A DNA stretch of 64,000 nucleotides, from assembly GCF_000315625.1 (NCBI RefSeq), contig NW_005434602.1, forward strand, positions 181,848 through 245,847, in the 5' to 3' direction. Origin of the DNA: Guillardia theta CCMP2712 (taxonomy: Eukaryota > Protista > Cryptophyta). The notes beneath the pieces were generated by a model, which was not told the origin of the DNA, did not search any database, and saw only the letters and a program-made list of their open reading frames with translations. Both the position numbers and the translations under genes were made by a program. Shown in pieces: positions 12,433 through 63,341 of this stretch. Each line of letters opens with the position of its first letter. The stretch's first letter is position 1.

Positions 12433-12718
12433 ACTTGAAGCTTTCTGCAGCTCTGAAGCTCAGTCGGACGGGGTCGCCAAGAGCCGACTAACACCTTCAT
12501 CGCCGATTCTTTACTTTGTTAAGAATGGCAGCAACCCAGACATAAAGAAACTATGTTGTCACTGACTAGTTTCGAATCGCGGTATGCCATGATTCCACTG
12601 CTGGGCCTCAGTCTCATTGAAGGGATCTGGATACTAAGGGTTGGTTCTCGCTGTCTTTTCTCTTCTCGCCGTTTGGCCTGTCCGACAGTGTCAGGGTCAA
12701 GCCTCCTCGACTCTCCTG

Positions 12719-12758
12719 ATTGTCCTCGTACTGATTTTTAACTTAACTTTGAGTAAAG
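12719..12758 (+). repeat. Dispersed 40-bp motif copy A (ATTGTCCTCGTACTGATTTTTAACTTAACTTTGAGTAAAG)
   Basis: 40/40 identical to 40659-40698. About 275 bp upstream of the ATG at 13034. Confidence 0.95.
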
Positions 12759-13033
12759 GCTCAGTGCAGCGGCTCGCCGCACCGTGAGTGGCGGCCGCCG
12801 GGCCCGGGGTATGAACATCCAAGTCCGCCTCAGGATAAAGCAAGAGGCAACAACGTCTTGATAGGGAACAAGGAGACTTTTTCGAATGCACTTGACCCTC
12901 CTTTCTCCCGCCACTTCCTCCTGCTCCTGCTCCTGCTCCTGCTGTCCTGCTCCTGCTGCAGCTGCCCTGCTGTCCTGCCTTGCTCCCGCTCCCTTCCTCT
13001 CCATCCTCGGCAGCAGTTTCCCTGTTGGGCAAC

Positions 13034-15770
13034 ATGTCTTGCTGTCTGTTCAAGGATCGGTGCAAGATGCCCAATAATCGGGCTGCAACTTTGCGAGCGT
13101 GTAGCTACTGTAGCCGCCCCTTCCATCATCTCTGTTCATCCTCCCTGACCGATGACGTGACGTGGTGTGGAGACTGCGACAAGGAAACCCTTGCAGCGAT
13201 AGAGGAGCCAGAGGCTCTGACATCGACGGGGAAGAGGAAGAGAGTCGCGGAGGACACAGTTCTGGAAAGGAACAGTATCGGCATACTGCAAGAGATGTCG
13301 GCAAACCGAACTGTCGAGGTCTCACACAACTCGAGATCATCCTACACGTCGAGTCAGACACGATTTCTTCAGTGGCTTCATATCACCTATCCAGGTATGG
13401 TGACAGAAGACTTCAGACGCCGGTTGGACATGGCCACGACAGTGTTGCCCTCAGGGCAGACAGTTGACATGCCTACAAGTGAGAGCTTGAAGTCTGCGCT
13501 GAGAGACCTTGCTTGGAACGATGAGGGAGAAGCAGCAGACCCTGAGAAAGGTGAAGAGTCTTTGCCTCCTCTATTGAATCTGACTGCTTGATTCCAGCAA
13601 ACCATCGGGTGGTTCCGATGCACTTCGAGCAATTCACAGCTGCCCATTTCTTGCAATGGATCGAATCGTTGAAAGCAGAAAACCAAGAAATACATTTTTC
13701 TACCGCAAGCAATCATAGATCGGCCTTAAATTGCCTCTACAGAGATTTTGGACAAACCATTCCAGCCGAAATGAAGAATGAAATCGGAGAAGCTTTCAAG
13801 AACTTGAGGAAGAACAATAACAACACAGCTCCTGCTGTCCCGCGAGAGGTCAGGAGCTCTAACAAAGTCCCGCTACCATTCTCTTTGTACACTCTTCTAT
13901 CCGAGAAAATGTTAATATGTAAGAACAGAGAATTTGTGTTCGCAAGGACGTTTTTCATAACATCGTGGAACCTGATGAGCAGGGCGGTGAATATCGAGTA
14001 TATCAAGTACAGCGATATGTCTTGGCATGACGACGCGCTCTGCATACAGTTTACTCATTTTCGATCGGAGCAAGTAGACGAGCGTCTTCGTTGTCCCAGA
14101 AGAATCTACTGCAATCCCAAATGCCCGGAGATCTGTCCCATCCTTGCCTTGGGCATCTACTTGTTAAGTTTTACTCCCGATCCTGAGAAATTGTTTCCCG
14201 GGAGATCGCAACATCATCGTTATCTCAACATCTTGCAGTCTGTGCTGACCTTGAAGGAAGAGGATGCGCAGGGAGGACGGGCCGCGTGGGAGTACCCTTC
14301 AGTGAAGAGGGAGATCAATAGAGGCTTGACTGCTCTTGGTCTTCATCCCAAGGACATCGGGACCCACAGTGTCCGACTCGGAGCTGCGACCTACTGCTCC
14401 TCTTCCAGCACCTTCGGCCCTCCATCGTCCTGCATCCAAGACCGAGCTGGCATGGGGAACCCTTCTTCGTCGGACAGCGAATTCAAGTAGGACGATTCTC
14501 TCTGCCTTGTGCTCATGATGCTTACTTTTCTATCTCCTACAGGTTTGAAGCAGCTGGCGATGCCTTCGTTGGACGGACCGTTGCAGGCCTGCCATTGCAG
14601 CAAGCAGATTTTGCGCTTCTGCCGCCTCACTTTGCGAGGAGAGATGAGCTCATCCCGTCATCCATAAGAACCTACTTTCCCAACCTGCCCTCGTCGATGG
14701 ATGTCGTACTGGAAAACGTGCTTGCTTCAGTCGTGTATCACCTCGACTACTTGAAGAAGAACCTTGATCCTCGACATCCCCTCTGGTTTTCTTCGCTCTT
14801 CCGAAACTTCCCTCTTCTGGACGATCTGAAATCTCGTGTCGTTTGCTGCATGCCCCACCAGACCAATGCGATGAAAGTCACTGGGCTGCCGCCCCACGTG
14901 TACCAGTATCTCTACAACGAGAAGGTTTACAAGGAGCTGGGGGAAGTTTCAGCGGAGAACAAGCTGATTTCACAGAATTTGAAGAGTGTTGCAGACAATT
15001 TCAAAGACCTGTCGAACCGAGTGGTGGCGGTGGAGAGGAAAGTCCAGGAGAGGCTGTCGAGGACAGTAGGAGAGGAAGGGGCATCAGCAGGCCCCGGTCC
15101 CTACGAGGAGTCTCCAGAACTTGAAAGCTACATTCGCCGGATCGTCACTGACACGATGCGCAGTGAGCTGCAGGAACACTTCAAGGCTGCTGTAGCTCAG
15201 ATCACGGCGAACGTGACGGCAGTTCTGCAGCCAAGAGCTTCCTCTATCAATGTGGTGGAGCAGGAAGTGAGGGAGGAACCAGAGGACAGGAGCAGCTGTC
15301 GCGTGAGGGAAAGGCTCACCTTCCCCCCCGATCTGCATTTCAAGGAGGAGCTGGACAGCCCGATATCCGGGTGGACCCTGTGGTACTGCGGGAGTGCATT
15401 GAAGGGATATCCACCCTTCAAGCAGCTGACATCTTGTGATCTGGCGAACCGAGACGACAAGAAGAGACTGTCAGACCTTCGGTTTCTGATCAAGTCCTTC
15501 AACACTTTCATCGAACGAGAGCTCAAAGACAGGTCGGATGAGGATCAAGGACTACAGGAGAAGAAGATGGTGGAGGACTTCAAGGCAAATCCAACCGTGG
15601 CGGTCGCTGAAGCGATCTTCCTCAAGTACGAGTCGAAGTTCTACAATTGGCTCAACATCGACTCTGGCTACAATCAACGTCGTAGCCAGCTGAAGTGGAG
15701 CACCTTCGTCAAGAAGCTGAGGAAGCGAAGCAGCTTGGACGCGAAACAGCTGCCAACGGGGGATGAATGA
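13034..15770 (+). CDS. Crypton-type tyrosine recombinase-like protein (N-terminal Cys/His finger, YR domain, GCR1_C-like C-terminus); exons 13034-13550, 13598-14486, 14543-15770
   Basis: HRSALNCLYRD, KVPLPFSLY, SWNLMSRAVN (catalytic R), CPILALGIY, KDIGTHSVRLGAATY (HxxR), DRAG, FEAAGDAFVGRTVAGLP...FALLPPHF, VTGLPPHV, WTLWYCG...YPPFKQL, RRSQLKWSTF are CryptonF-like signatures. Both introns are GT-AG and join in frame. Confidence 0.85.
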
Positions 15771-15998
15771 GTGCTGTTTGATTCGGACTGTTAAGACGCC
15801 CCAGCCTGGCATAGCAACGAGTCACCGTGCGGCATGTGATCAGGATGTACATTTAATTAAACTCTGAAACTTTGCACAGCGGCCTAACTTCTCCGGCGCC
15901 ACCCCGCTGGGCCTGTGGCCGGGCTGCCAGGGCCCGCTGACCGTCGGCGTCCGACTGCTGAGACTCCCGGGACCGTCAGTAGGACTCCGGGGATTCTC

Positions 15999-16800
15999 TT
16001 TATTGACTGAAAATGGAAATGCAAACCGGAGCAAACAAGGAGGAAAAGGAGAAAACCGACAAATCCGCCTCAAGAAAAAAACCAGGAAACGGAGGAGGCA
16101 GCAAAACCGCTACTCCAACCACGCAAGCGACGGCATGCACGACAAGCAGGGGAACAAGGATCAGGACAAAGAGCAGTAGCGCAAGGCTCCTGCGAGGAGG
16201 ACGGCAAGACCCATGCGAGAGCGATACTGCCGAAACAGACGAGCACGCAAACGATGAAAGCCAGGGTCCCCATACACCGCCTCCTGAGCACAGCCATCCC
16301 ACTCCGCTGTCAACGTTGCTCCATGGTGATCCGCCAGGTACCAAAGAAACCGCAAAGCGTCAGCATGAAGAAGACCATCCGTACCTGCAGTGAAGGGAAG
16401 AAAGGCCTTCGGCGGGTGATGGGTGCCATAACTGGCGCGATGATCCGAAATCTTCTGTTGGGCGGGGCCGGAGAGCGCAGAAAGGCCGATGGAGCTGCCG
16501 CTGCTGTTGTAGGGATGAGTCATCGTGAAGTCCAGAACCAGCCCATTCCAGGTGTGGGTGGAGAGGCCAGGGAGCCAGAGGTCGCCCATGTGTCTGTTTG
16601 TGGGGCCATGCTGAGGGACGTGGGTCCGGGTTTGTCGCAGACCCTGCTGATGAAGCTTGGTGACCATGCCCGCTTCCACGCAGATGTCGCGCAGACCCAC
16701 AGTACACTGCTCGTGTGCGGTGGTCCAGAGACCTGCGCGATGACGACAATGCCAGTGGATTCAGTAATACAGCCGGTGCCGTAACGGACATGAAACTGCC
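15999..16800 (-). mobile_element. Decayed, 5'-truncated non-LTR retrotransposon with restriction-like endonuclease (REL; CRE/R2/NeSL-type) C-terminus
   Basis: Minus-strand reading CPLRHRLYY*IHWHCRHRAGLWTTAHEQ (degenerate Cys/His knuckle plus RH-like motif), then HMGDLWLP...LVLDFTMTHP (PD..D), QQKISDHRASY (K..Y), FLPFTAGTDGLLHADALRFL. In-frame stop present. AATAAA on minus strand at 15999-16004. Confidence 0.7.
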
Positions 16801-16899
16801 CTGTAACTGATCATAACCTTCGAGCATCTTCCAGACTGTCTCTGCGCATAGCATGGCTGGATCGAAAGCTAGATAGAGCAGCGCTAGCAGCTACTTAGT

Positions 16900-16963
16900 C
16901 CTCCTCCTCCTCCTCCTCCTCCTCCTCCTCCTCCTGCTACCCCTCTCCTACTCCTCCTCCTCC
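16900..16963. repeat. (CCT)n microsatellite
   Basis: Directly seen. Confidence 0.9.
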
Positions 16964-17375
16964 TTGAACCCGAACCTTCACGTCGTCCAAGTTTCCCATG
17001 AATATCTTACTGCCCCTCCCCACAAAACAGCTCATTTCGTAATTCTTCTTGTGGTCCCACCGACTCGAATACCATTCCTCCTTCTCGGCTCTGACATCTC
17101 TGAGATCCTTCTTCTCCCACAGTCAGCTCACGGCTGTCAGAAGTAGCTTCCTTGTGTTTGGTGTTCACTGCTGTCCCCCTGCTCCTGCTCTTTCCTAGTC
17201 CTTGCGCTCTATGCAGTTCAGTCTCCGTCTAGCGCCAACAAATTGCAGATTATTGCAGCATCTAGTGTTTCATCAGTTCTCCTTTGTTGACATTGACTTG
17301 ATTTATCTTCTGAGTTCGCCGCTCAGGTTCAACGACATGAAACTTGAATTCTAATACCTTTCTGAAGCAAAGCTG

Positions 17376-20300
17376 ATGTCTGAGATGGAGGTCGAAGCCT
17401 TGTCTCAGCCTGACGAGGGGATCAGAATCACCTTTCCGTTCAAAGATTGTTTTGATGATCCGGAGAAGACGCAGAACTATACCAATGAAGATGTGATTCG
17501 ACACGCTCGCGAGTTTGTCTTGTTGAACGATCGTTTACTTGCTGCTCAATCCTTGGCGGGATCGTCAACAACGGACGCATCGAAGCTCTCAGAGTGCTTG
17601 GATGGCTTGCTACAATACCTAGTCTCATGTATGCATGCAGTCGCCTGGTCCTTGGTAAGATTTAACGAAGGAAAAGGTCTTCCTTCGAAAGAATTTCAGA
17701 AGACCCTTGAAGAGTTCATGGGTCGTATTCTAAATAACATCAGGTGGTCAGTCGAGCACGAGCAAAATGACTTCCGTAATGAGAATCTGAAAGTTATTTC
17801 CAACTGTTGCAGTGAAAGCGCGTGCAGTCATGACATGCTGAAGGAAATCTCTCTACGGTTTGCAAGTGCCATGAGTCCTGCAGTCAAAGAGCTCCTTTGT
17901 CGAGAATACTGCAAACTTGAAACGAAGGAGACGTCGCCAAATTCATCTGCCTTGGGGAACAAGGATTTCTTCCGATCTAGTGTGTTGCTGATCACCCCAT
18001 CAAGAGCGAGTAAGTTCAATCAGCTTCGATTATCGTGTTTTTCTCATTCTTTCCTGCAGGAATTAGCGATTGTCGAAATGAGAAACCGTCGAAAGTAAGG
18101 GATGTTGGAGTGAATCTCTCTACCATAGCCAGCATTCGAGCTGCTTTTACCGAGTTGGGAGGAGTGAGTGTCATAACAAAGGCATTCACAACAAACATCC
18201 AGGACCTCCAGATGGAAATTGATCAGCAATATGTTCTCATGGTTATCGAACTTTTCAAGCAATCTCGGTCACTGCCCTGGGATGCGACTCAGTGGTTCTT
18301 CAGAATCTTAATGGTTGTCATGTGGAATACCGTCAGAGGCTTGACGTCTGATGATTCTACCAAAAGGACGTCGTTCTGCGAACAGCTTATGTTGTGTGCT
18401 TTCGAGTTTGGCAAAAAGGTTGAATTCATTCACTTCAAGTACAATCTTGAATTGATATACGCGTGTTACGTGTTTACAAACTCATCTCAAACATGCTTAG
18501 ATAATTATCAGCCACGCCTTAGCATGATTCGGATGGCTGTCTCGATTATTCTCACCATGCTGAAAAGAGCAGCGGAAGATAGCGACTGGAAAATACAAGA
18601 TAATTTGCAAAGGCCTGATTTGGAAGTTTTGCGCTCTGCCTGCAGGACTGCTCCAAACGATGTTGGAGAAGATGTTAGGGAATGGGATTGTAAGACCCCA
18701 TACTCCATGATTGATCGAGTCACCATCTTCTTCTCTGTGTGTGGTGCGAGCACTTTGAAATTCTGCTACGATTACCTGAAGAACGAGATGGTTCAGCCGG
18801 AGAAAGAAGGGTCAACTGCAAAACTTGAGATGCCAGCAGGAGAAAACAATGAACCTGGCGTGTCATCATCCAAGAAGAAGACACAGACGGCGGATCATCA
18901 GAGCTCATCAGCTGCAGCCAATCTTGCTTCCAGTCTCTCTTCGTCCGACAAGGAAATTCAGGGAGCTAGTTTGCCGCTGGAATCTTCAAAGAGATCTTAT
19001 GACCTGACAGATGCAATTTTGATCTTGATGGAAGATTGGATGTTTAGATTTGACGCTCACACTTGTTTCGGGCCTCTTGTTCAGACGTGCTTGGACGCTG
19101 ATGTGCTGGATAGTTTTCTCTTGTTTCTCAATGTTGCGTCTGAAACCGTAAAAGGAAAAATACGTGGAAGGCTTTCAAGATGGAATGAAGTTACACAGCT
19201 TCTGATTGATAACAAGTACATTAGTGGTGCGATAGGTGGCAAGCTGGTCAAAAGAATGTGGCTTAAAGATTCGTTGGTAGTTCCTGGGGAGGTGTTGAGG
19301 CTTCTAGTGAGAGTTTTGCTTAACCATATGGAGCAAGATTGTGAAGAAGCTTCTGTCATGGCGATGCAAATGTGGGAATCTACCTTGGATACGTTTAGAT
19401 ATCTTTTGGAAAGGAGTTTCAGTGAAGGGGATCGCGGAATCTGTGGAGTTGTCGGTGCAGATCTGACATCAAGCGCATCAAGGGATCTTGACAACGTCGT
19501 TGAACTCACAATTCTATTGTCATTTGGATTTCATACGCTGGAGACTGAGAAAAAAGGAACAATCTTCAAAGAGCTCGTCTCGATGTATGCGAAAACAACT
19601 CAAGCCAACAAGATCGATCACAATCTCTCACTTAACCTTTTCCTACTAGTTCAGCACTTCTCTCGACATTTTGATTCACCTCACCCTCAATTTCTCGATG
19701 ATTTGTCGAATATCATCACCATCGAATCGTCGAAATTATCATCTTTCGACTTACAAGTTGTCGACCGAACAATGATTCTTCTCAATGGGGCTTACGTGAC
19801 AGCAGGAAGCAACCCAGAAAATTTTTCTCGTTGGCACATCATGGCTGATGTATTATCACCAGGAAAGCTTGATCCCTCGATCAGAGAATTGCTAGCGATG
19901 AACAACGATGAACTTTACTCTGCACTGCTGACTGCTTCTTCCACTTTCATGAAAGTGCTCTACGTCTCTCCCTCACCATCCTGCAACAAGTCCTTCAACG
20001 CAGTGATCCTGTTGATGGCCTGGAGGTTCTTGAGAGATCTGGATGGACATCATGACAATCTCCCCTTTCAATTGGACGATTGTGTTGCTGTTGTCAACCA
20101 TCCAGACCTCTCAGTCTTCGATTTTCTGATGCAGCTACAGAAGATGCTTGACTTTGACCTCACCAGCAGAGATCAGCTCTTACAGCTCTTGAGAAACTGT
20201 TGTCAGCTGGTAGAAGAGGTCGGGAGGGATGACGGAAACGAGCAGTCGGCCATGAGAGCGACCGTGAGCTGCTTCGTCATGGATGCGCTGACAGGGATGC

Positions 20301-33282: not shown

Positions 33283-33299
33283 AAGAGAAGTTGGTAGCT

Positions 33300-36200
33300 T
33301 CACTCGCTCAGCAGCCTCAGCATGCTTGCCGTGCTGCCAAGGTTAACCGTAGGGACAATCCTTTTAGGAGCAAGCAGCTTGACCTGTGAAAGAATCGGAT
33401 TAGTAAAGTCAGTAGAGAATGATATCATCCTCACAATTGTAGTCATCGACATCAGCAATCAGCTTCATCCATGTCATCAATGCATCATCAACATCAATGT
33501 TTATCAACATCAAGAGCATCGTCGTCGTCATCGTCATGAACATCCTTGTTCTCATCGTCATCGTAATCATTTCACCATCGATCGGATCTCCGAGAAGCTG
33601 CTGTGCTCGCTGTAAGGAACCCCGTAGATGACGAGAGGTCCTCGCTCCTGCCTGCTCACGCCCTGCCGCAACCAAGTATTACCTTCTCCGCCCTTACCAC
33701 CACCTCACCCCCCCTCCTCCCCCTCCCCCCCCTCCCCCTCCCCCTCCTCGCTCCCTCCCCTTCCAGTGACCTTCAACTCACCAGCGCCTTCTCCACACCA
33801 GAAAGCGNNNNNNNNNNNNNNNNNNNNNNNNNNNNNNNNNNNNNNNNNNNNNNNNNNNNNNNNNNNNNNNNNNNNNNNNNNNNNNNNNNNNNNNNNNNNN
33901 NNNNNNNNNNNNNNNNNNNNNNNNNNNNNNNNNNNNNNNNNNNNNNNNNNNNNNNNNNNNNNNNNNNNNNNNNNNNNNNNNNNNNNNNNNNNNNNNNNNN
34001 NNNNNNNNNNNNNNNNNNNNNNNNNNNNNNNNNNNNNNNNNNNNNNNNNNNNNNNNNNNNNNNNNNNNNNNNNNNNNNNNNNNNNNNNNNNNNNNNNNNN
34101 NNNNNNNNNNNNNNNNNNNNNNNNNNNNNNNNNNNNNNNNNNNNNNNNNNNNNNNNNNNNNNNNNNNNNNNNNNNNNNNNNNNNNNNNNNNNNNNNNNNN
34201 NNNNNNNNNNNNNNNNNNNNNNNNNNNNNNNNNNNNNNNNNNNNNNNNNNTCCTCCTCCTCCTCCTCCTCCTCCTCCTCCTCCTCCTCCTCCTCCTCCTC
34301 CTCCTCCTCCTCCTCCTCCTCCTCCTCCTCCTCCTCTTCCTCCTCCTCCTCCTCCTCCTCCTCCTCCTCTTCCCCCTCTCCCGCACGGTCCCCCAGAGAA
34401 CGTCCATCCGGTCGGTCGTATCCCGACGACAGTCTTGTACTTCCCCTTTGCCATCCCCAGGTAGGCCGACATCTGCTTGAAGTTGATGCATCCCATGGGC
34501 ACTACATGCAGCCTGGCCTCATGCGCCACCGTCGTCAGGCGCTGCTGGTCCTCCTCCTTCAGCTCGAGGCACTCGAGGACCTTCTTCTTGGCGGGATGGA
34601 CGTACAGCTTGCAGCCGCTCTCCCGCGCCGCCTGCAGGAAGACCTCCTCCTTGCCGATGGTGTAGGAGCCGACGAGGAACAAAGTCTCCCTGTTGGCAAA
34701 CGCGTTCGACTTGACCAGCTCCCCGACGAAACGAATCGCGTCCTCCTGGGCAGGGAACTCGTGCTCAGGGCTGCAGTAGGTGGTGTCGAGGAAGAGATGA
34801 TCTATCTTCCTGCTCCCAGTCGATGTGAAGGAGGACAAGACCGGGTCCTCGCTGAACTTTGGGTGGAAGCGAAAGTCTCCGGTGTGCAGGTGGCACTTGC
34901 CATCGGGAGTCTCAAAGAGGATCAGTGCCGAGCCCGGACAGTGGTTTGCAGGAAGGAAGGTGACGCGGGTCCCCTCGATGAGTAGCGGAGAGTGATAAGC
35001 CACGGCAACCAGGTGGTCCGCGCTCACTCCGATCTTCAACTTCACCAGCCTTGCAGTGACGGGCGTGCAGTAGATCTTACCTGAGTTGAACTTCTTCCTC
35101 AGCCCGGCGTAGTGATCGGCATGGAAGTGGGAGAGGATGTAGTGCTTGACAACAGAGTTCCGCACGTGGAAGTTGTCGACGGTGAAGGAGCTGGCTCCCG
35201 GCACACTGTGATGAAACGCGTTGCTACCTGTTACCCGATCTTCACTCCACATGCTCGTCTTCTTCGGCTTCTGCGCTGGAGACTTTCCCTTCTTCCCCTG
35301 CCCTCCTGCAGGGCTCTTGAGGGTCTGAGGGGGGGCTTGTGCTATCGATCCCTTGCCTCCGAAGAAGGCGAAGATCGGACGAGTGTTAGCAGCCGTCAGC
35401 TGTTGTCCACCCGCTCCTTCTCCGCCGACCTGCCTGTCATGCACGCTGTGAAGCTCCTGCTCGGGCTCGTAGCCGTGGTGGGGATCGAGAGGCGGACGCT
35501 GCGGGGAAGGGAGGGCATCGTCGTGCTTGAGAGCTTCAATGCTGTCGGCAAGCAGGAGGAAGTCTTCGTGCGAGGCGAGGTCAAGGCCCATCTCCCTACA
35601 ACGGGGTCGGATCAAGGTCAAGCTCGAAGGAGGCAGCGATACCTCAGGTCGGCTGACGTCAGCGCCCTCAGGCAGGACATGTCCGTCACGTCGTGGAGGA
35701 CGAAAGTCTGTCATGGATCGTCACAAGGCCGAAACCTGCTGCTACACTCACCTCGAAAAAGCTCTCCAACCCCAGGACTTCCAACCAATTACGAAGTTCT
35801 CCGTCCTGCCCCTGCCCCTGCCCCTGCCCCTGCCCCTGCCCCTGCCCCTGCCCCTGCTCCTGCTCCTGCCCCTGCCCCTGCCCCTGCCCCTGCCCCTGCC
35901 CCTGCCCCGCCCTCGCCCTGCCCCTGCCCCTGCCCCTGCCCCTGCCCCTGCCCCTGCCCCTGCCCCTGCCCCTGCCCCATTCGTCGGACAGGAGATTCAA
36001 ACCCGACCCCTGGCTCTTCATGCAACATTGCGCTCACTGTTCGCTGCTTCTTGACACTTGCTTGGGTCTCCTCTTGTTCTGGAGATGCTGGGGGGTTCAC
36101 GGGAGGAGAGAGCTGGTTGAGATCCCCTGGACTGGGCAAGGAGGGAGCATCAATACAGTTGTTGACGTGCTGATTGCGATCTTCTAAGGATATATCCTCC

Positions 36201-36469: not shown

Positions 36470-36752
36470 GGCTACTGCAGATGATCCCCACACTGATGAG
36501 ACAACAAGTCCGACCAGAAGAGGAAGAATGATGTGAAGCTGCGAGAGGAAACTAGGCCAAGCGGATGAACTGCAGAGAAGCAGCAGAGATACAGGGAAGA
36601 CAAGAGAAGGACAGAGTAACTTCAAGATGGGAAGACAAGGATATGCGTCCTCCACATGAACTCTCGATCACCGCAGCAGCATTCCACCTTCCCTTCCCTC
36701 CATTTCCTTTCAAAGCATCAAATGTTTACTCATCAAAGGGAGTCCCTAGTAG

Positions 36753-36767
36753 TTAACTTTGAGTAAA
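36753..36767 (+). repeat. Dispersed motif, partial copy D (TTAACTTTGAGTAAA)
   Basis: 15-bp exact 3' part of the motif. An inverted TTTACTCA lies at 36725-36732. Confidence 0.75.
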
Positions 36768-36939
36768 AGCCCTAGTAGTCTGGCTCAGTGACCCGTTGCC
36801 TCGGAGTTGGTCCTGCTTCGGGCTTTCCCCCGGTGCCGGGCCGCCGGGCTCGGAGGTACAAGTCCGAGCAGTGACAGATAGGGCCGTTAGAAGATAGCGA
36901 GCCGTGACGGGAATCTCAAGGTTATGGAGACATACAAGG

Positions 36940-36970
36940 GTACTGATTTTTAACTTAACTTTGAGTAAAG
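36940..36970 (+). repeat. Dispersed motif copy B (GTACTGATTTTTAACTTAACTTTGAGTAAAG)
   Basis: 31/31 identical to the 3' part of copies A and C. Confidence 0.95.
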
Positions 36971-40658: not shown

Positions 40659-40698
40659 ATTGTCCTCGTACTGATTTTTAACTTAACTTTGAGTAAAG
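40659..40698 (+). repeat. Dispersed 40-bp motif copy C
   Basis: 40/40 identical to 12719-12758. Confidence 0.95.
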
Positions 40699-49753: not shown

Positions 49754-50574
49754 AGTTGCCAGGTTGCGAGGATACAAGGAGATGTCTTGTTTGGAAAATA
49801 AAAGAAACTGTTGGGTCTGCTTTGTGAGGGCACAGGTAGCTAAAGAAAAATCAGATGGCGGTTGGGACATAACGCGATGGCGAGCAGATTATTGTCTCAT
49901 CAGGGGTTGTAGTTGGAGACTTTACGGCTTGATTTCAAGGACAACGTGTTGGGCTCGAGACCTCACTCTGCATGCCCCTTGCTCTTTTCCCTCAGGGCAG
50001 GTGGCAGATAGGAGGCGCGTACGCTCACAAGACGTGATGGAGCATAGCGCAGGGCGGAACAAGAACAATTACAGAGGGCTAAGGGTAATGCCGGCCAACA
50101 AATAGCTGGTGATGACTGCAGGATGGACGGAGATGGGAATGACGAATTTGGACATTCGAGGGGAGTGAAGAATTCAAAGGGCTGAAGAACGAAGGTCTCA
50201 ACCCACATGGAGATTTGTAAAAGTAGCGATGAAAGTGACTGTAAGAATGAGATATGTGGAAATGCTGTGGAAACAAGAGAAGACAGGAACAAAGATAAGT
50301 GCCTGTCGTTCCGTGGAAATAAGAGCAAAGAGGAACAGAGATGAGTTCCTATCCTTGTAAGATTTAACGAGTAGGGATCAAAAGAGATACAAGACAATAA
50401 GTTTGGAGGAGTGACGTTGCTACCCCGACGTGGTTGTGACATGACTTCCTGAGCGCGATGGTACGAGATCCAGGAGATATACAGAGAGATTGCACACAGT
50501 GCAAGAGTATCAAAGACAAGCAGGATTTCCTCTTATCCATCCTTGAAAATGTCGCCCACATCCTGCATGCCCCG

Positions 50575-51887: not shown

Positions 51888-52093
51888 GGCGGACTGCCCC
51901 TTCAGTCAACTAGGAATGAGGGGGATGAGGGGCAAAACCAGGCTGCAATATGAGTCTCGGCGGCCCCCGGGCCCGGGGCCGGGCCCGCGGCCCGGGCCGG
52001 GGCGTGCGCGGGCCTGGTGACGGGGAGCCTCGGCACGCGGCATCATGAAACACACGACGGACCGTCAAGGAAATCACTCAGGCCCTTGAAATT

Positions 52094-52108
52094 TTTACTC
52101 AAAGTTAA
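52094..52108 (-). repeat. Dispersed motif, partial copy E (reverse complement TTAACTTTGAGTAAA)
   Basis: TTTACTCAAAGTTAA on + strand. The TACTGAT half occurs on minus at 52128-52134. About 205 bp upstream of the aquaporin ATG. Confidence 0.75.
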
Positions 52109-52345
52109 AACAAGGCTCACAGTTAGTATCAGTATCTCAGTGATCGTCACTGCAATATGCGCCTGCTTCCACCCTTGCTGCAGTGCTGTGAGTGAGGCTC
52201 CGGGCCTTGTGCCGGGCTTTCAGCCTCCGAGCCATCGTAGGCACCTTCTGACACCTTCTTCTTGACTGAAGTCAAAGTCACTTTCATTTACGGTCGGCAA
52301 AGTTCGTTCTCTCAGTATTTATTGATGTCAGTCCAGGAATGCACA

Positions 52346-53096
52346 TTACAAGGCCAATGAAAGCCAACCAGCGATGAGCGACAGCCCTCCTATCGGGGTT
52401 ATCGCTCCCAGAGCCTTCTTGTTGGTCAGAACCAGCAAGTATCTGATCAACAAACATAATCAATGTTGAAGATACAACTCTCTCTGCAGCGAATCACTTA
52501 CAAGGAACCTGAGAATAACACCATCCCAGCAGTGAACAGCGGAGGAGCGAGCCTGGCATGGCTCTCAGCCCAAGAGAAGCAATGACAATGAGGTGAACAG
52601 GTACCTCAATGATCTCTTGCTCAGGTGTCCATGTCCGACGGACACGGCTGTAAACAGAATGTCAGCAATGTGAATCCTGTAGTATGGAATAATACCCAAG
52701 AGCGCGACAGAATGCACAAGGTGATAATGCGAAGCTGTCTCCCAAATCTTGATCATAGCAGGGTCGACCTGTCATTTGCTCACACTTGATTGCAACTTAG
52801 TGTATGGAAATTATTCAATGACCTTTGTCTTGAGTCCATGCGCGCCAAAAGCACCCAACCTGTTGAAGCAACAGAACATCAGGGTATGGACTGAAGATGG
52901 TATGATCCTCGCCCCCCATATCTCCTGGGATGTCTTGTGCACTTCTCGATTCATGGCATAGGTCACATCTTGTTCGCTTCCCTCCCTCCTCCCTCCCTCC
53001 CTCCTGTAACCGTTTCCACCCATGCATAACAGCGTGTCATCCTCACCCTATCGCCATGGCGCCGCTGACCGCTGCTAGCTGTGTGGTGGTCGGCAT
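52346..53096 (-). CDS. TMEM256: TMEM256 / DUF423 small membrane protein (multi-exon)
   Basis: LAAVSGAMAIG|LGAFGAHGL, IWETASHYHLVHSVALL, FTAGMVLFSGSL|YLLVLT..KALGAITPIGGLSLIAGWLSLAL*. Confidence 0.9.
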
Positions 53097-53514
53097 GTCA
53101 GCTTGAGGCGCAGCAATCACCGCAAGGTATTATATTTTACTCAACAGCAGAATTTTGAGGCAAGCTTGCATCAAACAAATTAAGTAAATTATCTCTCCTA
53201 CATGTAGGCCCGCCCTGTCAGTTAGTTTAGTCGCATAGCCGACTAGGATTGCAAGGGAATGAGGGGCTGAGAGGTGAGATGAAGCGATGAGAAGACAGCA
53301 ACTTCTGTCCGCACAAGCCTGATGTGAGTCTTGTCTCTGCCCACCTTCGAAAGTGCTTCCTGCCACGGTTGGCATACCTGACATGTGCGGCGTATGGAGC
53401 ATTCATTCCCGTGGAACCTTGAAGCGCTAGCATTTCCTTGGTGGCTGTGAGCTTCTGGATGGTGTTTGACGAGGAAGTGTAGCGGCCAAGTGTGTATCAC
53501 GACAAGACATCGCA

Positions 53515-56500
53515 ATGGACGGAGGACGTGCCTGGATGATGGCAAACCTGACTCTTAGGTTGAAGAAGGAACGACGCCCAGCCCGTCACCTGGTCGGTCA
53601 ACCGCCTCGATGTGCTTTCATGGACGAGAAGCCAGTCTTCAAAGATAGCCTCATCCCACATGACCACGACCATGTTCTTCATCATCGTCTTCAGATCCTG
53701 CATTCACCTCATCTGCAACCCATCTGTAAGCTCGCCATGTACCTCGGCTACAAGAGCAGTCATATTGCGATCAAAGACGAAGATAGCTCTCAAGTTGTTG
53801 CAGGGCATAAGAGACCACAATCAGCTCAACCGATGTCACGGAAGATACATCTCGACCAATCGTCTGAAAATGTTTCCAGGAACCAAACATCATCAAAAGG
53901 ACAAACTTCCTTGGAGCAGACCTACCAGCTACGTCCTAAATCAGCTACATCGAAATCAAGGAAGCTTGTTCTCAGTCCTGATTCTCCTTCAAAATCCCAG
54001 CCGAGTGTTTTTTCCAGCTCGAGCAACTTTCCAGACGAAGCTTCACACATGAAACGCAAACGACCTCGACTCATCAAAAGTGGCCACTTTCTAGACCTTC
54101 TGAGCAGGAAGAAATCACAAAGTTCGATTGTGATGACATCAACAAAGGTCCTCGAAGCGGAGATCAAGCAGACCACTACCGTCTTTCAAAGTGTTGAGAT
54201 CGTCGTCTGGAAGAATCATCCATTTGCTTACATAGCTCTGCTTCACTCAATGCTACAGGGGAAAGATTTGACAGGAATACTGAGATTGCTAGTTGATCCT
54301 TATTTCCTGTGCAAATGTATTATCAATTCTGGAGTTGATTCACTTATCGCCTTCATTGGCCGTTTACAGGATCGCGTTCAGACTGAATTTGACAACACAC
54401 GAGGAGCTGCAAAAACTCTGTCGCAGTTAAAGTCGAAATTGGTAAGTGTTGCCTATACCTTCAGACTTGAAGAAATCAAAATATTTGAATTGATGCAACA
54501 GTCCAGTGAGCTTGTATCAGAGTTTGAAATGAATTTGAAACGAAGCTTAGATGAAGCCTCAAGATTTCTTCGTCTTCTAGAAGCATCCCAAGACGAATTG
54601 AGGAGTCTGAATTTCAAATCACCAGAATGGGCAGCGATTCATGATTATCTTATGATGTTAGATCAGCTCGGAGTCACGAGCAGTCTGAGCCCTGAGGAAA
54701 ACAAAATGGTTGCTCACCATGCCACAGCTATGGAGACTCGCTTCACTGAAGACATCAGTCACGAGGCTGAAAATCATTTCCTACTGAGTGGTATTTCTCA
54801 CAAAAGCTCTGATTCGATTTATGTTTCTTCAAGATCTAATGCAGTGTTGTGCCCGGATCTCTCAGGAAAGATAGAAGATTTGATGCGTGAACTATCACTG
54901 TATTACAACTGTTCCTTTGAGGAACAATCGATCAAATTCTTAGCTCATGATTATGCCAAAGTGACACTTCCGAGTGAGCAATGCAAGATCAGTGAAAACG
55001 ATCAGACCAGACCCTCTGAAACATTAACAATCTCAAGACTCAGGCGACCTATGTGGGAGAAAGCAACGTTTTATCTCGTATTCCATGATTCAAGCTTTGA
55101 TCAAATACTTTGGCTGCTCGAACGCGAGGTTTTTCCTCTCTTACAGTGGTTCCTTCGAAATCACTTTGTTGAGCTCTCATTCGTCGCGTTGGGACCGCAG
55201 AGCGAACACTCGCAAAACAAGACACTGAGAGATAAGAAGTCCTCTGTCAAGACCAACGACAGCCCTTCACATGACTCATTCTTTGTGCTTCCCATCAGAA
55301 ATGGCCACACGTTTGTTGAGAGAGAAAAAAACTTTGTATATGTCAATTGCTCGGCAAAAATTCACTCCGGTGAAGAGCAGGCTGTTTTGAAACAAATGAT
55401 TGTACCATGCCTTCTCACGATGGTGTCTGAGCTGTATCCAAAGATTGACTCTTCCAAACCTATTGCCACGAATGTAATCATTGGAGATCAGTCACAGACT
55501 ATGAGGGCGAAGGCGAGGCTATTTGTGAGTTGGAAGACACTGAGACACACGGTGAATCAGATCGCCAAGTTCTTTCAGAGGAAGGGCCCCTCAGCTCTGG
55601 TCAGACTGAGCGGCTCTCTTGGAGTCGGTAAGAGCATGACCATGGCTCATGTAGCAGAGAGCATTGCGCTATCTTCAACCGACAAGCACCGGGTCATCTA
55701 TTACCGAGATGCTATCCAACACAGCTCTGTCTCCTTTCTCCAGTACCTGACCTTTTGTATCCCTGAATGCAAAATGTCTCAATTTCACTGCAAAAGGTTT
55801 GGACAATGGTTGCAATCTTCGGACTTCTCCCTTGACATCATAGCCGATGGGGTGACGCAGGAAGACATCAATACTTTGGAAACAATCTTTCAATTTGCAC
55901 CCGATCTGCAAAGGAAGGTGAGGATATTGTATACACTCACAGCTGGCACAACGAGACATCAATGTATCCACGTGTATCCCCTCCATTTTGATGAACGCAT
56001 GACACTGATCGACGAGATGTGCAACCGACATGATTTGGAATTGGACAAGACCTGTAAACAGAATCTGGCATCCAAGAAAGATTCAAGGATTCCATTGTAT
56101 GTGGAAGCCACCATCAAAACAATCGCATTGTTTACAAAGACTGTCTCTGCCTTTCATGACAATCTACTTTCACGTGATGATGTGTTGTGGCACGTGATTG
56201 ATCAATGCCCTCAAGATTTGGACGACCTTTATGAATATCACACGATTCCATTTCTGGAATTCAAATATAATAAGGCGATTGTTTCAACAGTGCTGCAATT
56301 TTTGTATTTCACAGAGAAGGCAATTTCATTCTTTACCTTATGGAAGATGGTTCAAGAACAATTGAGTGCCGAACATCTCAAAGATCTTGACTCGATCACG
56401 TTTTACAGTGATCTGGCACACTTTCTTCTTGACGACAGTGATACTAGTGACTTCCACATTTACATGAAGCCCAAATCAATCTTTCGCAAAGCTGTGTCTC

Positions 56501-59152
56501 GACGTTACTTTCGGGATTACATCTTGAATGAGATGGAGGCTAACAACTTGCAGAAAGTGTTGAATAGGAGAGATTCCATCGACAAGATAATCTTTTCCCT
56601 CCGCAACGCAGTTGCTGAAGAGCAAGGAAACGGAATCAAGAACGTGCTCTCCTTTGACGATGTTGACACGAACGACTTGGAAAGCGACAACAAAGACGAT
56701 CTCTTTCCATTCACTCCTGAGACCAAACTATACTTCAGGATCAAAGCGAAGAGGAAGGAGAGTGCGGATGATGCAGCATCCAGAAAGAAGACTCTAGCGG
56801 CGCATGCTCTCACTGTTGCTGAATCGCACATGGGTGGTGTCCTCTGCATAACATCGTGGTCAAAGAATGGAAACAACTTCATAGCTACTGGTGGGAACGA
56901 TCACAATGTGAATGTTTGGTACTTCCTTTTCAAAGCAGACTTCTTATCACAAAGTTATCAATCATGTAATTTTCTCCACAATTCTCGGCTTGTTGATCTT
57001 AATTACTTCCTGTCTAAATCAGACTCAATCGTCCCCAGCAACTTCTTCCAGCGGTCTCACGTGCTGACGAGTCTCAAGGGGCACGGGCGGGCTGTGACTT
57101 CGCTGGTGTATAGCTCCGGGCTTCTCTTCAGTGGGAGCTCCGACAACTTGATCAAGATCTGGGAGACGCAGAAATGGGAGTGCATACAGACACTGAAGAT
57201 GCACAAGGGCATGGTGACGACCCTGTTACACTCTGAGCAGCACTTGTTCAGCGCTGGATCTGACGGGAAGGTGTTTGCTTGGAGAGTTGGGGAACACCTT
57301 CCATCTGCAAGTTGGGACAGAACAAAGAGAGCTCAGATCTTGTGCATGCACATAGTCGGCGACCTCTTGTATGCTGGCCTCGAGAGGAGATGGGACGAAG
57401 CCGGCAATCCGATCAGAATCTGGAAGATGGATCTCACGCAAGAGGTGGGTCAACTTCCCTCCAAAGAGGTGCAAGAGCTTGACAAGGAATCGTCCAAGAA
57501 CAAGACGCTTGTCAGCATCATCCAGGAAAAGATCCGAATCCTATCCAACGAGACTTACAAAACACACAGTCCGATCAGAAAGGGTGAGTTACACCAGGAA
57601 ATCCAGGAGCAACAAAATCTCAAGAGTACATTGAAGAAGAAGATACAACATCTCCAATCAAACTTCAATCGAATGAATGGGAGTCTCTACCACACCACCG
57701 ACGTGTCCTGCATCCACGCGCCAATTTCGAGCTCTGGGTCAAAACCGAACCTCCTGTTCACCGCGGGATCTGACGTGATTCTGGTGTGGGACCTCAACAA
57801 CAGGATGTGCCTTGGATCTCTAGAAAACGAGAAGGGCAAGAACGTGTTCGTGAAGTGCATGAGCAGCGCCGACAACGTGCTGTACGTGGGAGGAGGTCTG
57901 CTACCGGAGGGCGGCGTCTCGCAGCGAGCAGGTCGCGTAACGGTCTGGAACTGCACGAGCAGGAGGTACCTGACGTCATTGAGCACAGAGGGGGTGGTGG
58001 TAGCGCTACACCTGGTTGAGAACAGCCTGATCGTGGGCACCATGGCTGGCTCTGTCCAGATCTTCACGACCGACAGCAACTCGAGCGCCTTCGATATGCA
58101 CCTGAGGAAGCAGACGCGGCTGGTGGAGGAGCTGCAGATAGACCGGAGCTTGTCTTACGACCAGAAGAAGCACGAGGTACAGCAGGCAAATCGCATCTGC
58201 GACATGTTGGACCTCATCAGGATGTTCTCCTCAGACCCGTCGGTCATCACTGCTCTCCTCGTCAAACTCACCTCCCTCCTCGACGAGAAGAGCCTCGAGA
58301 TCGACGAGGCCATCATTGAAGCCCTGGAAGCGCCATCCACGTCACCTCCGAGCACTACGAGATCTTCAAGATTCAGTTGTACATGCTCAACATCGTCAGC
58401 GTCTTCGATCATCACATCCTCGCCTCCCACGAGACCCTCAGCTCCCCCATCAGGCTGGACAAGTTCCTGCCCATCATCAAGAGGCTACACGGAATGACTC
58501 AGATCCGCACTGCCGGTAACTTTCTTCCCTCCTCCCCCTCCTCCCCCTCCTCCCCCTCCCCTCCTCCTTCTTACTCATTGTTTCAGCCTGCCTGATCATC
58601 CTCGAGCGGCTCTTCACGCCCATGAGTTTCAAGGAGCTGCACGCGCATCGCTCGCACAAGCAGGAGCAGGAGCACCCGGCGGCTCTCAAGAAGCTTCGGA
58701 GCAAGAAGCATGACGCGGGCGATCACCAGCGCAAGGAGACCATGACCTCTCTCATCGCCGAGGAAGCCCTCCAAGTCATCCTTCACTTCGTTCGACACTA
58801 CCCGTCTGACGTCACCTGCATGGAACTCGCCATGGCCGTCCTGCGCTTCAGTGCCTTGGAGTGCCCCGCCATGACGCTGAAGACGATCCAAGGGTGCGAG
58901 GAGGACATCTTCGACGCCCTCGAGCTGATCTGCCTCGAGCCCAAGTTTGAGCAGCACGGGACGAGCATCCTGTCAGACCTCCGGGTGGTCCAGCGACATC
59001 TGGAGCTGAGGGTCAACGGGAAGGTTTTGCCCATGTTGGCAGGCAAGATGACGTCAACGTCCAACACAGTCTTCAAGTATTTTCATCCTGCTGAATCATC
59101 TCATACCCGCCATACAGAGGAGACGTGGAAGCACTTGCTGCATCGCATCTGA
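53515..59152 (+). CDS. NWD/TEP1-like protein: degenerate DUF4062-like + P-loop (NACHT-like) + WD40 repeats + helical C-terminus
   Basis: LLEREVFPLLQWF. Walker A-like LSGSLGVGKSMTMA, IIADGV, S.IPLYV. WD40s (IATGGNDHNVNVW, LKGHGRAVTSL...LFSGSSDNLIKIW, LFSAGSDGKVFAW). Frame shift near 58330, then an intron at ~58515-58586. True start uncertain. Confidence 0.7.
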
Positions 59153-59281
59153 GAGACTTGAACCTTGTTTACTTGTATCATACACATTGGTGACTGATCA
59201 ATGAATATCAAAGTACACGGGACGACCACCGCTGTCCTTCCCCTGCAACATCTAGCTCCTCAATGTACATATTTCTTCCCC

Positions 59282-62200
59282 TCATCGCATTTTCCTGGGC
59301 CATGTCAGTCCGGCAGCAGAAGGGCTTTCTCGAGTCACCTGACTGGCAGTGTCTGCGAGAGCTTCTTGCTGGAGAAATGCTGACGTCATCAACGTCAGTC
59401 GCCTGTTCCCACCCTCCTCAGCTTCGCACCTCGAAGTCTTTCGCTAGGGAGGACGTGTGCTTGAGCGTCATCGACTTGGAGTCTGGACGGGCATCAGCGA
59501 TCAGGTCCAGCAAGGAGGAGGAGGAGGAGGCAGACATTCTGCGGTCGGAGTCTCCGGCGCCTCGAGGAAGGCCTTGTTGCCCTTCGGGAAGGTGAGAGGC
59601 CAGCTGACTTCAGTGATTCCTGACCTGCTGGCGGATGATGGGAGCTAGGTCGGGATGCTTGAAGGAAGGCTGAAAGCTCCAGTCCACACGATTGTTTTCG
59701 AAGTAGAGATCCCCCGACCCCTACCAGCACCTCTCAACTCTCATATGATTGCCTCTCCTCCCTCTGTACCCACCAGTTTGTTCCCTTCGATTCGAAGCTG
59801 GTCGCCGTAGTTCGCTGCAATGTCGTTTCCAACGTATCTCCCCTTCGCTCCTTTAGGTGATTTCAGAAAACAAGGAGGAGGAAGAGGAGGAGGAGGAGGA
59901 GGAGGAGGAGGAAGCCGAAAAGAAAACGAGACTGAGGAGGTTGACGAAGATGATTTCAACGAAGAGAAGAGGAGGAAAGAGGAGGAGGAGGAGGAGTAGA
60001 AGGAGAACGGGGAGGAGGAGGAGGAGGAGGAGGAGGAGGAGGAGGATGAGGAGGAGGAGGAGGAGGAGGAGGACCTGGTTGAAGGTGCAGTCCCACGCCA
60101 TTTCCGTTGTTGATCTGATTCTCAAGGAGCTCTGGGTCCGCATTCTTCTCCACCTGGAAGCTTATCAGACCCTCAGCACTTGCAGAGAGTCACGTGACCT
60201 TCACGCCAGCGCCTGCGTTCATGAAGATGCGGTTCAGCTCGTACACTCCCCTTCCTGTGCTGCCAACCACAAGCCCATCCCCCTGCGCAGGGGCTGAGGC
60301 GAGGCAGGAGGGAGGGAAGGGCAGTCTACCTTTCCGTCGTGAATCAGATTTTTCTTTAGCACAGGGGCTGATCCGCCATCGACTCGGATCGCACAAACCT
60401 GCGAAAAAAGCTTGTCAAACAGGCGATGACTGACACGTTGGGGTCAAAGTTATTGCCTCCCATCATGAATCGACTTTCGTCCTCTACCCACCTGGTTCTG
60501 AAAGAAGTCGTTCCTCTCTATCCTGGCCGAAGACTTCCCGGTGACAAGACAACCATGGAGGCAGCCTAGGTAGATCATGTTCTTCCTCAGCAGTGGGTTT
60601 CCTCCGTCAATCTGAAGCCTCCAGCTCAGCAGGAGCATCGGGCCCACCAGGAACCTCTTACCCTTATCCCCGACTTCTTGTTCTGGTAGATTCTGTTTCC
60701 CCGAATGACTCCGGCTCCCCCCCAGGACACAAGGATCCCGTCCTCGTAACCGTCATGCACGCGATTGTCCTTCTCGATCAGCGGCTTCCCGTCCGACTCG
60801 ATTCTGATCCCTGCTTCCACGTTGAAGCAAACCTGCGCGCTCCCCGTCAGACAGCGTCTTCCTGCCTACTCTCCTCCCCCACATCGTTCCCTTCCAGCTG
60901 CCCCCTGCCGGAATCCGCCACCTGAAATCCGCTCCGCCTGTTGGCTTCAACAAGATGCGTCAGGTTCAAGGAGGTGAGGAGGAGGAGGAGTTGGTAGGGA
61001 TGGAGGAGGAGAGGTGCAGTTGGAAGAGTTGGCGAGGGAGGAACAGGAGACGTACCTGACACTTCGTTCTGGACAAATTTCGGGTTGGCGTGCCGAGTAA
61101 TTACAACTCCCATCAGAGTATTCTTCATGATCCTGTCCAACCGGGTCAACCAAGGAGACACTTCTCTAGGAGAGGTATCATCGTACTTGTTCTTCACGAA
61201 CTCTCCAGTAGAGTAAGACGAGCAGTTGACCCCGTCTGTCTCCCCTTCAAAGATTGCATTTCCCTTGAAGAGTCTTCAAGTCAGAACAGAATGTTGACAG
61301 GCACGGAAATTCTACAGGGGATGAACCCAGCAATGCTAGAAACAGGTTGACTTGTAAAACGTTCACTGACTGGATTTGTAGTCTCCAGACGAGTGTTGTG
61401 AGCAGCTCTCAACTAAATCACTCGCCCTCCTTCTGGATTCTACTGGTATGAAGTGTAATGTACCTCAAAGATCGGGTTTGCTCCGTTCTCCAAAACAACT
61501 CCAGCATGAGAGTTCCTGTAGATCTGTTGCTTGTCACTGTTGTGCTCGACCGGTCAACCTTGTAACACCTGGTTCTCCCTGAACGTTCCTCTCCCGTCGT
61601 TTGTCACCTTCACTCCAACACCTGGCAACACGACCATGACTACTCCTGCTGGAAACGAGCAGGGCAGCTCTCACCGATCCCCTCGTAGATCCTGTTCGCC
61701 TGCACCAGCGGGTTTCCTCCAGTTCGAACTTCGATCCCACACAACTTGTTGAGGAAGATGTCGTTGTCCTCGATCCTGCAAAACTCAGCAATCACCAACG
61801 TCCCAGAGATTCGCAGGAGGCAGAAACAACCTTCCCTCCCCATCATCGGCCACCGTGATCCCCGTCCCCAACCCGTTGGACACTCTGTTGTGAGAGATGG
61901 AGGGGTTGCTCTCCGCGTCGATGTAGATCCCTGCCAGCACGTTCTGAAAGATCTCGTTTCTCCGAATGAAACCATGCCCGTCCCCTGTCACGAAGATCCC
62001 ATGGGCTCTGTTCCTATGAATCGTGTTCATCGACAACGTCGGCTCTCCCCCTGACATGATCACAACCCCCGACCCGTCGTTGTTGCGAATATCGTTGTCC
62101 TCGAACGTCCCCAGACCGTTGCTCATCACCATGATCCCGTCGGCACTCCCCTCGTAGACTGCATTCCCTCGAAAGATCGGCTCTGCCTCGTCATCCACAC

Positions 62201-63251
62201 AAACGTTGGAGGACTTGTTGGAATAGATCTGGTTTCCCATCAGCAAGCCCTTTCCCTTGTCCGTCACGCGAACCCCACACCCATAGGACTGGAAGATCTT
62301 ACAGCGAAGGATCACAGGATCGGCTCCTGACTCGATCTGCAAGTTTGCCAGCCGGCACTCAGCAAACCTGCAGTCTTCCACCCTTCCGGTCGACCCGTCG
62401 CCTACCCAGAGCCCCTGGTGGGCCGAGAACTCGAACTCGCACTTGCTGAAGAACGGGGAGGATCCTCCTTGAACTCTACAGGCCACACCTGCGTCAGAGC
62501 TGAAGCTGCACTCCCTGAAGACAGAGCTGCCTCCGATGATGTCAACAGCCGTCCTAGCAAGCAGGCCTTGCAAGTCCCCGTGATCCTTCATGCGAAAGTT
62601 GATGCGCTGAGATATCGTCAGGCCGAGCACCTGCACTCCCGACGCGTTCACGACGATGACTGGCTCGCCATAGTCGGAGAAGATTCTCGCTTCCGACCTC
62701 ACGTACTCCAAGTCAACTTGGGTAGTGTCTGGGTCCTTGAGTCGTTGGACGTCAGGTATGCGGGGAACAAGGGCAGAAGGGTCGGGAACGGCATTTCTAT
62801 CCTTCACACCCTCGATGCGCAGTCTCTTGTCCAGGAAGAGAGGCCTCGAACCCACAGAGTGCCTTCCAGCTTGAACCACGAGGATCTGACCATCATCGGC
62901 AGCAGCTACTGCTTCCTGCAGAGTCTCGAAGTGGGTAGAGGACCATCCGTCAGGGACCGGATGGCCAGTCACGACGAAGGCAGTTCTGTCAATGAGAATG
63001 CCATCTGGCCGTATGATTTTCCTCTCATTCTGCAAGCAGAGCAGCTCCTGCGAGCTCCACTTGTCCAGCGCCAGCAAGTTTCGCTGCTTCTTCTTATCTT
63101 CCGCACCTTTCCCTCCCGTCCCCAGGATGGCATCATCCCCGAGATCGACATGTCCATACTTGCTCTTTGCCGCATCCAAGGAACCAGCCTCCAGCAGCGT
63201 GTGCAGCAGCCCGCCTCCTCCCTCCCTCGACTCCCCCCCCCTCCTCCTCAT
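59282..63251 (-). CDS. Right-handed parallel beta-helix (PbH1/NosD) repeat protein, FBXO10/FBXO11-like C-terminus (multi-exon)
   Basis: FETLQEAVAAA..GQILVVQAGRH cap followed by many G(I/V)xVxxxGxGxxExNxIxxN / GxxPxxxxNxI repeats. Final exons traced to ...RKMR* at 59282. No F-box recognised. Confidence 0.85.
59874..60073. repeat. (GAG)n microsatellite tracts in an intron of the beta-helix gene
   Basis: Directly seen. Confidence 0.9.
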
Positions 63252-63303
63252 GCCCGTTGCCGAAACTTTGCAACTTCGGTTTTACAACTTTGTTTCAAAC
63301 TTC

Positions 63304-63341
63304 CTTTTCCTCAAAGTTAAGTGAAAATCATTACGTGGACA
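63304..63341 (-). repeat. Dispersed motif, diverged copy F (TGTCCACGTAATGATTTTCACTTAACTTTGAGGAAAAG)
   Basis: About 32/38 match to the consensus on the minus strand. About 55 bp upstream of the ATG at 63251. Confidence 0.85.

What the first reader, a model, noticed from the sequence alone, without database searches (positions are those of the whole stretch)
12719..63341. Oriented ~40-bp non-coding motif upstream of five unrelated genes
Seen: TGTCCTCGTACTGATTTTTAACTTAACTTTGAGTAAAG occurs at 12719-12758 and 40659-40698 (40/40 identical), 36940-36970 (31/31) and 63304-63341 (minus, ~32/38), and as a 15-bp core at 36753 (+) and 52094 (-). Flanks are unrelated, so it is not a larger duplication. 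All six copies are intergenic and point toward the 5' end of the next same-strand gene (Crypton-like ~275 bp, RSH-like ~1.1-1.4 kb, MTase ~560 bp, aquaporin ~205 bp, beta-helix ~55 bp). It has a TTAAC-TTAAC direct repeat, a weak dyad (TACTGA-N15-TGAGTA) and a donor-like GA|GTAAAG end. Inference: it is too long and conserved for an ordinary TF site. Candidates are an unusual core-promoter/boundary element, a spliced-leader-like mini-exon or relic (SL trans-splicing has been reported in cryptomonads, but I cannot confirm that SL sequence here), or the end/attachment site of a tiny mobile element. Six per 64 kb would extrapolate to thousands genome-wide.
Basis: partly seen in the sequence, partly recalled or inferred. 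Interest (0 to 1): 0.85.

Follow-up and report, generated by a model that had tools for sequence, protein, structure and literature searches.

The report
Tail end of a LINE retrotransposon
The repeated 40-base motif is the last stretch of a 4.3-kb jumping gene (an R2-like LINE) of the alga Guillardia theta, left behind about 1,500 times as very short, front-truncated copies; it is an ordinary mobile-element scar, not a promoter or spliced leader.

Summary
The six copies are real, but they are the 3' end of a ~4.34-kb non-LTR retrotransposon (RT + CCHC knuckle + restriction-like endonuclease; best structural matches R2). The genome is Guillardia theta. Counts fall stepwise from the fixed 3' end: 1,529 (last 15 nt), 1,083 (29 nt), 300 (-90), 73 (-235), about ten reaching the RT; two 1,350-codon ORFs are intact. 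Target-site duplications of 7-12 nt flank 16/75 copies (0.5 by chance), including the 15-nt copy at 36753. Two window copies (12637-12757, 63306-63459) are 121-nt pieces, so the flanks are not unrelated. In 47 other loci copies favour gene 5' sides but point toward and away about equally (25 vs 23). The published spliced leader is a different 17-mer; one element copy carries it at its front, joined at a splice acceptor, which shows an RNA intermediate. The scan found this family before on other DNA (at least four reports). Minor extras: no poly(A) tail, extreme truncation, a YADN active site shared by a deep clade. No reads could be laid.

The parts
12637..12757 (+).
36753..36767 (+). Last 15 nt of the LINE: a complete 15-nt insertion flanked by a 10-nt target-site duplication (36744-36753 and 36770-36779; two extra purines before the second copy)
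36940..36969 (+). Last 30 nt of the LINE, 100% identical; no TSD recognised
40659..40697 (+). Last 39 nt of the LINE, 100% identical; no TSD recognised
52094..52108 (-). Last 15 nt of the LINE, in the divergent spacer between the aquaporin gene (-) and the 1,675-codon ORF at 53470 (+)
63306..63459 (-). Older copy: last ~121 nt of the LINE, broken up by ~35 nt of later small insertions

Best explanation
The motif is the 3' terminus of a young, dispersed, tail-less non-LTR retrotransposon of G. theta (~4.34 kb; one 1,350-codon ORF with RT, CCHC knuckle and restriction-like endonuclease; ~165-nt 3' UTR ending in GAGTAAA). Mechanism: target-primed reverse transcription. The protein binds its RNA, nicks chromosomal DNA, and copies the RNA from its 3' end; synthesis usually stops after 15-60 nt, and a second nick 7-12 nt away leaves a target-site duplication. 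The window copies are dead scars. SHOWN: identity of the motif with the element's 3' end, truncation ladder, TSDs, nested insertions into older copies, an RNA intermediate (SL-capped copy), domain layout. INFERRED from R2 biology: the nicking and priming chemistry. INFERRED, untested: the 5'-side bias reflects longer or more open spacers upstream of genes, or selection against exonic insertions.
For: The motif extends leftward into one shared sequence and stops at one right end. Two copies share 1,866 nt at 99.6%, ending at the motif. The long copy L061:609-4109(-) encodes RVT_1 (E 4.8e-8), a C-x2-C-x12-H-x3-C knuckle and RLE motifs conserved in relatives. The AlphaFold model (pLDDT 83.5, pTM 0.86) best matches R2Tg, R2Pm and R2Bm TPRT structures (E 4e-18 to 1e-15, >1,000 columns). 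Intact 1,350-codon frames lie at C22 and C31; at C31 the 5' terminus is at 85580. Ladder 1,529 / 1,083 / 300 / 73. TSD >=7 nt in 16/75 copies vs 0.5 in shuffled pairings, maximum 4. Copies inserted inside older copies carry 8-nt duplications (L045, L048, L053). L050 begins with the full 17-nt SL joined at the parent's pyrimidine-rich CAG acceptor, 434 nt from the 3' end.
Against: Only about a fifth of copies show a clean TSD; four of five testable short window copies show none (later micro-insertions, 43 in 4,116 aligned nt, can erode them). There is no poly(A) tail. The RT has N at the second Asp of YxDD, yet copies are 97-99% identical at protein level, so the family was recently active. The sample comes from the first 11 contigs only.
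Confidence: 0.96

Rival explanations
1. Oriented core-promoter or boundary element, either native or exapted from the LINE tail.
For: 65-73% of nearest coding segments face the copy with their 5' side (p 0.02-0.0002 against 50%). Downstream calls are slightly more often same-strand (71-81%) than upstream calls face away (58-67%).
Against: Toward vs away counts are 25:23, 23:22, 24:20, 27:24 (p 0.3-1.0); Fisher p 0.08-0.44. Distances to genes run from 55 to >1,000 nt. Close pairs occur in all four orientations (6, 5, 4, 2). TSDs and the ladder need no promoter role. The 50% baseline ignores that 5' spacers are longer.
Confidence: 0.03
2. Spliced-leader mini-exon or SL relic with a donor at GA|GTAAAG.
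For: SL trans-splicing exists in G. theta (PMC5619915), and the motif end resembles a donor site.
Against: The published SL is a different 17-mer, with 21 genomic copies followed by GT. The motif's sequence after the GT is 4-5 nt long, followed by unrelated flanks, with no Sm site. It is the 3' UTR of an RT ORF. The true SL occurs at the opposite end of an element copy.
Confidence: 0.005
3. The short copies come from a separate short RNA or SINE sharing the LINE tail, or from deletion of longer copies, not from early RT fall-off.
For: Median length of the 30 anchored copies is about 44 nt, with a pile-up at 33-50 nt. One copy derives from an internally trans-spliced, shortened RNA.
Against: Left ends are scattered (12, 15, 17, 20, 33, 37, 43, 50, 65 ... 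nt) with no shared non-LINE head. TSDs directly enclose 12-50-nt copies, so these were short when inserted.
Confidence: 0.05

Closest known systems
R2 retrotransposons (R2Bm 8GH6, R2Tg 9NL3/9DOU, R2Pm 9NL2)
   Same: Single ORF, RT-thumb-linker-CCHC-RLE order; top Foldseek hits; R2Bm is the only PDB sequence hit (E 0.024); 5'-truncated copies with a fixed 3' end.
   Different: No rDNA target; dispersed over >1,500 sites; no N-terminal zinc finger seen in the L066 translation; 13% identity; YADN instead of YADD.
CRE clade (CRE1/CRE2, SLACS, CZAR; from my own knowledge also Cnl1, MoTeR)
   Same: RLE-type, early-branching architecture in a protist that has SL trans-splicing; motifs such as LPxxxGGxG and LGLP..CxxC resemble CRE-type proteins (recalled, not tested).
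   Different: Trypanosomatid CRE elements insert into SL RNA genes; this family does not. Clade placement needs named RT references that I did not have.
HERO clade
   Same: RLE clade with many non-specific, dispersed families (PMC4640811).
   Different: Membership not tested; no microsatellite preference seen in the flanks.
Cryptomonad spliced leader (Roy 2017, PMC5619915)
   Same: Same organism.
   Different: Unrelated sequence, 17 nt, about 20 genes with GT and an Sm site.

Membership tests
Non-LTR retrotransposon, RLE group | Single ORF with non-LTR RT | tested here: met
   RVT_1 above cutoff; 1,350-codon frames; fold matches R2
Non-LTR retrotransposon, RLE group | CCHC knuckle then C-terminal restriction-like endonuclease (H, D, D/E, distal K; PMC5678591) | tested here: met
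   [quoted passage not shown] Catalysis itself not tested.
Non-LTR retrotransposon, RLE group | Fixed 3' end, variable 5' truncation, no LTR/TIR | tested here: met
   and ladder counts (6, 11, 24, 26)
Non-LTR retrotransposon, RLE group | Target-site duplications | tested here: met
   16/75 at >=7 nt vs 0.5 expected
Non-LTR retrotransposon, RLE group | Canonical YxDD motif (usual, not defining) | tested here: not met
   YADN; 16 xxDN rows fall in one 17-member clade, support 0.83
CRE clade | Monophyly with named CRE RTs | not testable with these tools
   No named CRE/SLACS/CZAR sequences were returned
CRE clade (trypanosomatid families) | Site-specific insertion in SL RNA genes | tested here: not met
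   21 SL genes vs >1,500 dispersed ends with unrelated flanks
R2 clade | 28S rDNA target and N-terminal ZF/Myb | tested here: not met
   Flanks are unrelated intergenic DNA; no C2H2 motif by eye in the N-terminal 420 aa of L066
Cryptomonad spliced leader | Published 17-nt exon followed by GT and Sm site | tested here: not met
Cryptomonad spliced leader | Present at mRNA 5' ends | not testable with these tools
Oriented core promoter element | Fixed orientation and distance to gene starts | tested here: not met
   (n=47 loci; coding-strand caller 87-98% correct when it calls, on held-out CDS; no annotation or TSS data)

The most novel reading that the evidence does not exclude
The element belongs to an undescribed, deep lineage of tail-less RLE LINEs whose RT carries YxDN and a conserved 5' terminus (ATGGCGTG in three families). 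The Asp-to-Asn change makes the RT poorly processive, so the family mainly writes 15-50-nt scars into 5' spacers of genes, and it also copies SL-trans-spliced RNAs.
Probability: 0.15. Interest if true: 0.5.

Novelty: new member of a known kind. Interest (0 to 1): 0.15.

Why it matters
Mainly as a correction: any 'conserved intergenic motif' of this sequence in G. theta is a LINE scar and should be masked before promoter or SL searches. For mobile-element specialists there is modest interest in a recently active, non-site-specific, tail-less RLE element with a YADN active site and insertions as short as 12-15 nt that still carry TSDs. It would be a natural case for asking what limits TPRT processivity.

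Tried and rejected
SL identity: rejected. Promoter orientation: not supported (the first order-4 model called too few windows, so order-2/3 models were used). Structured RNA: the 3' UTR folds no better than shuffles (z -0.54), so the 'dyad' is not supported as a hairpin. SL-gene targeting: not for this family; the sister-family contigs L074/L075 hold no SL sequence. Literature searches found no paper describing this family or a YADN retrotransposon; Repbase and Dfam were not available. The full-length C22/C31 copies were therefore not read; the 5' end comes from ENA contig L066 plus one coordinate.

Full report
Observation. All six copies are at or within two bases of the stated places. A 19-nt core with up to three mismatches has a chance expectation of 0.00 in the window. 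One statement fails: the flanks are not unrelated. The copy at 12.7 kb runs from 12637 to 12757 and the one at 63.3 kb from 63459 to 63306; both are the same 121-nt sequence, the second broken by later insertions. The assembly gap (33808-34250) abuts a TCC microsatellite 2.5 kb from the nearest copy and plays no part in the argument.

Organism. The assembly has 87.1 Mb in 669 contigs and holds 21 exact copies of the published Guillardia theta spliced-leader exon plus GT (PMC5619915 reports 20). Relatives of the element's protein are named G. theta CCMP2712 proteins.

What the motif is. The last 29 nt occur 1,083 times (<=2 mismatches; reversed control 0). In 60 loci the copies stop at one right end (GAGTAAA) and extend leftward for varying lengths along one shared sequence. 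Two copies share 1,866 nt at 99.6%. Walking left reaches a 1,167-codon frame (L061:609-4109, minus strand) whose stop lies ~165 nt before the motif's end. It has a Pfam RVT_1 hit, a CCHC knuckle and restriction-like-endonuclease motifs shared with relatives. Its predicted structure (pLDDT 83.5) matches R2 TPRT complexes best, then L1 ORF2p. The genome holds 50 listed protein matches (a lower bound), two with uninterrupted 1,350-codon frames at 99% identity (C22, C31). The C31 copy runs from a 5' terminus at 85580 to about 89915, i.e. ~4.34 kb.

How it got there. Counts fall with distance from the 3' end: 1,529 for the last 15 nt (exact), 1,083 for the last 29, 300 at -77 to -98, 73 at -226 to -247, about ten covering the RT, and one exact 5' terminus. 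Of 30 copies anchored on the exact 29-mer, 20 are 33-54 nt long. Direct repeats of 7-12 nt join the two flanks in 16 of 75 copies, against 0.5 in shuffled pairings; zero to five extra, mostly purine, bases precede the second repeat. Such TSDs enclose copies of only 12, 15, 20 and 33 nt, including window 36753, so these were short when inserted. Three copies sit inside older copies of the same element, whose sequence supplies the empty site, with 8-nt duplications (L045, L048, L053). One copy (L050, C8) begins with the complete 17-nt SL joined to the element at a pyrimidine-rich CAG, 434 nt from the 3' end: a reverse-transcribed, trans-spliced element RNA. This is direct evidence of an RNA intermediate, and it puts the real SL at the opposite end from the motif. 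The nick-and-prime chemistry is inferred from R2.

Orientation. I trained a codon-position Markov model on 16 long ORFs (87-98% right on held-out CDS when it calls) and asked, for 47 independent non-window loci, which strand the nearest coding segment uses on either side. Copies lie on gene 5' sides in 65-73% of calls, but point toward and away from those 5' ends about equally (for example 25 vs 23; p 0.3-1.0 in ten settings). A small excess of 'toward' is not significant (Fisher p 0.08-0.44). Copies cluster (17 adjacent pairs under 1 kb among 100 ends vs 2.1 under uniform placement, 8.3 if only a quarter of the genome is open) and close pairs show all four orientations. In the window, one locus is clearly a divergent spacer and two more probably are, so the five-for-five pattern needs little luck. 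The test is rough: no annotation, 1.5-kb flanks, first 11 contigs only.

Comparison with known systems. It works like R2 and is a member of the RLE group of non-LTR retrotransposons. It is not an R2 (no rDNA target) and does not target SL genes as trypanosomatid CRE elements do. PMC4640811 lists five RLE clades defined by RT phylogeny and domain structure; I had no named references, so the CRE label is untested. Unusual but minor traits: no poly(A) tail; very short copies; YADN in place of YxDD. The last is no lesion of this family: 16 xxDN sequences fall in one 17-member clade of deeply diverged metagenomic relatives (support 0.83). Three families of that clade begin with the same eight bases, ATGGCGTG. 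I found no paper on the family or the motif variant.

Earlier scan notes. My reading was fixed before the look-up. Four follow-up reports on other windows reach the same conclusion (s1-433747, s1-437079, s1-439572, s1-453418), and YADN was noted in s1-437182. These are not independent evidence. s1-453418 gave the lead to SL-capped copies, of which I verified one.

Limits.

Verdict. Real repeat, ordinary cause: new member of a known kind, already seen by this scan. Interest 0.15.

Noticed in passing
window 15997-16750 (-): 756-nt 5'-truncated copy of a sister LINE family (92% DNA identity to ENA contig L074, whose ORF is 1,468 aa), lying tail-to-tail with the Crypton-like gene.
   Followed up: partly
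L050 (G000 C8:121111-121127, -): Element copy capped by the full 17-nt spliced leader at an internal CAG acceptor of the element RNA.
   Followed up: yes
G000, one search list: The last 13 nt of the SL occur 33 times: 21 SL genes plus 12 others (reversed control 3). The excess may be SL-capped retrocopies of element or host mRNAs.
   Followed up: partly
G000 C19:796733-799765 (-) and C19:800671 (-): A 45%-identical sister-family copy with a 1,406-codon frame lies ~0.9 kb downstream of an SL gene on the same strand; ENA contigs L074/L075 of a sister family show no SL. Letters not fetched.
   Followed up: partly
L061 ORF residues 512-515; alignment A3: RT motif YADN (xxDN) marks a deep clade of metagenomic RLE LINEs.
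   Followed up: partly
L066, L067-L072, L074-L075: Three related families start with the same ATGGCGTG and lack a poly(A) tail.
   Followed up: partly
copies in L001-L060 and window 63306-63459: Copies carry many small insertions (43 insertions, 18 deletions, 108 substitutions in 4,116 nt), often CG-rich or ACTG/CAGT-like; the fold-back origin proposed in s1-439529 was not tested.
   Followed up: partly
L076-L078: A relative (P0175) from marine metagenomes starts directly after CCCTAAA-type telomeric repeats, suggesting a telomere-associated member of the YxDN clade.
   Followed up: no
window 1-2076 (+): 692-codon ORF containing an internal ~970-nt direct repeat.
   Followed up: no
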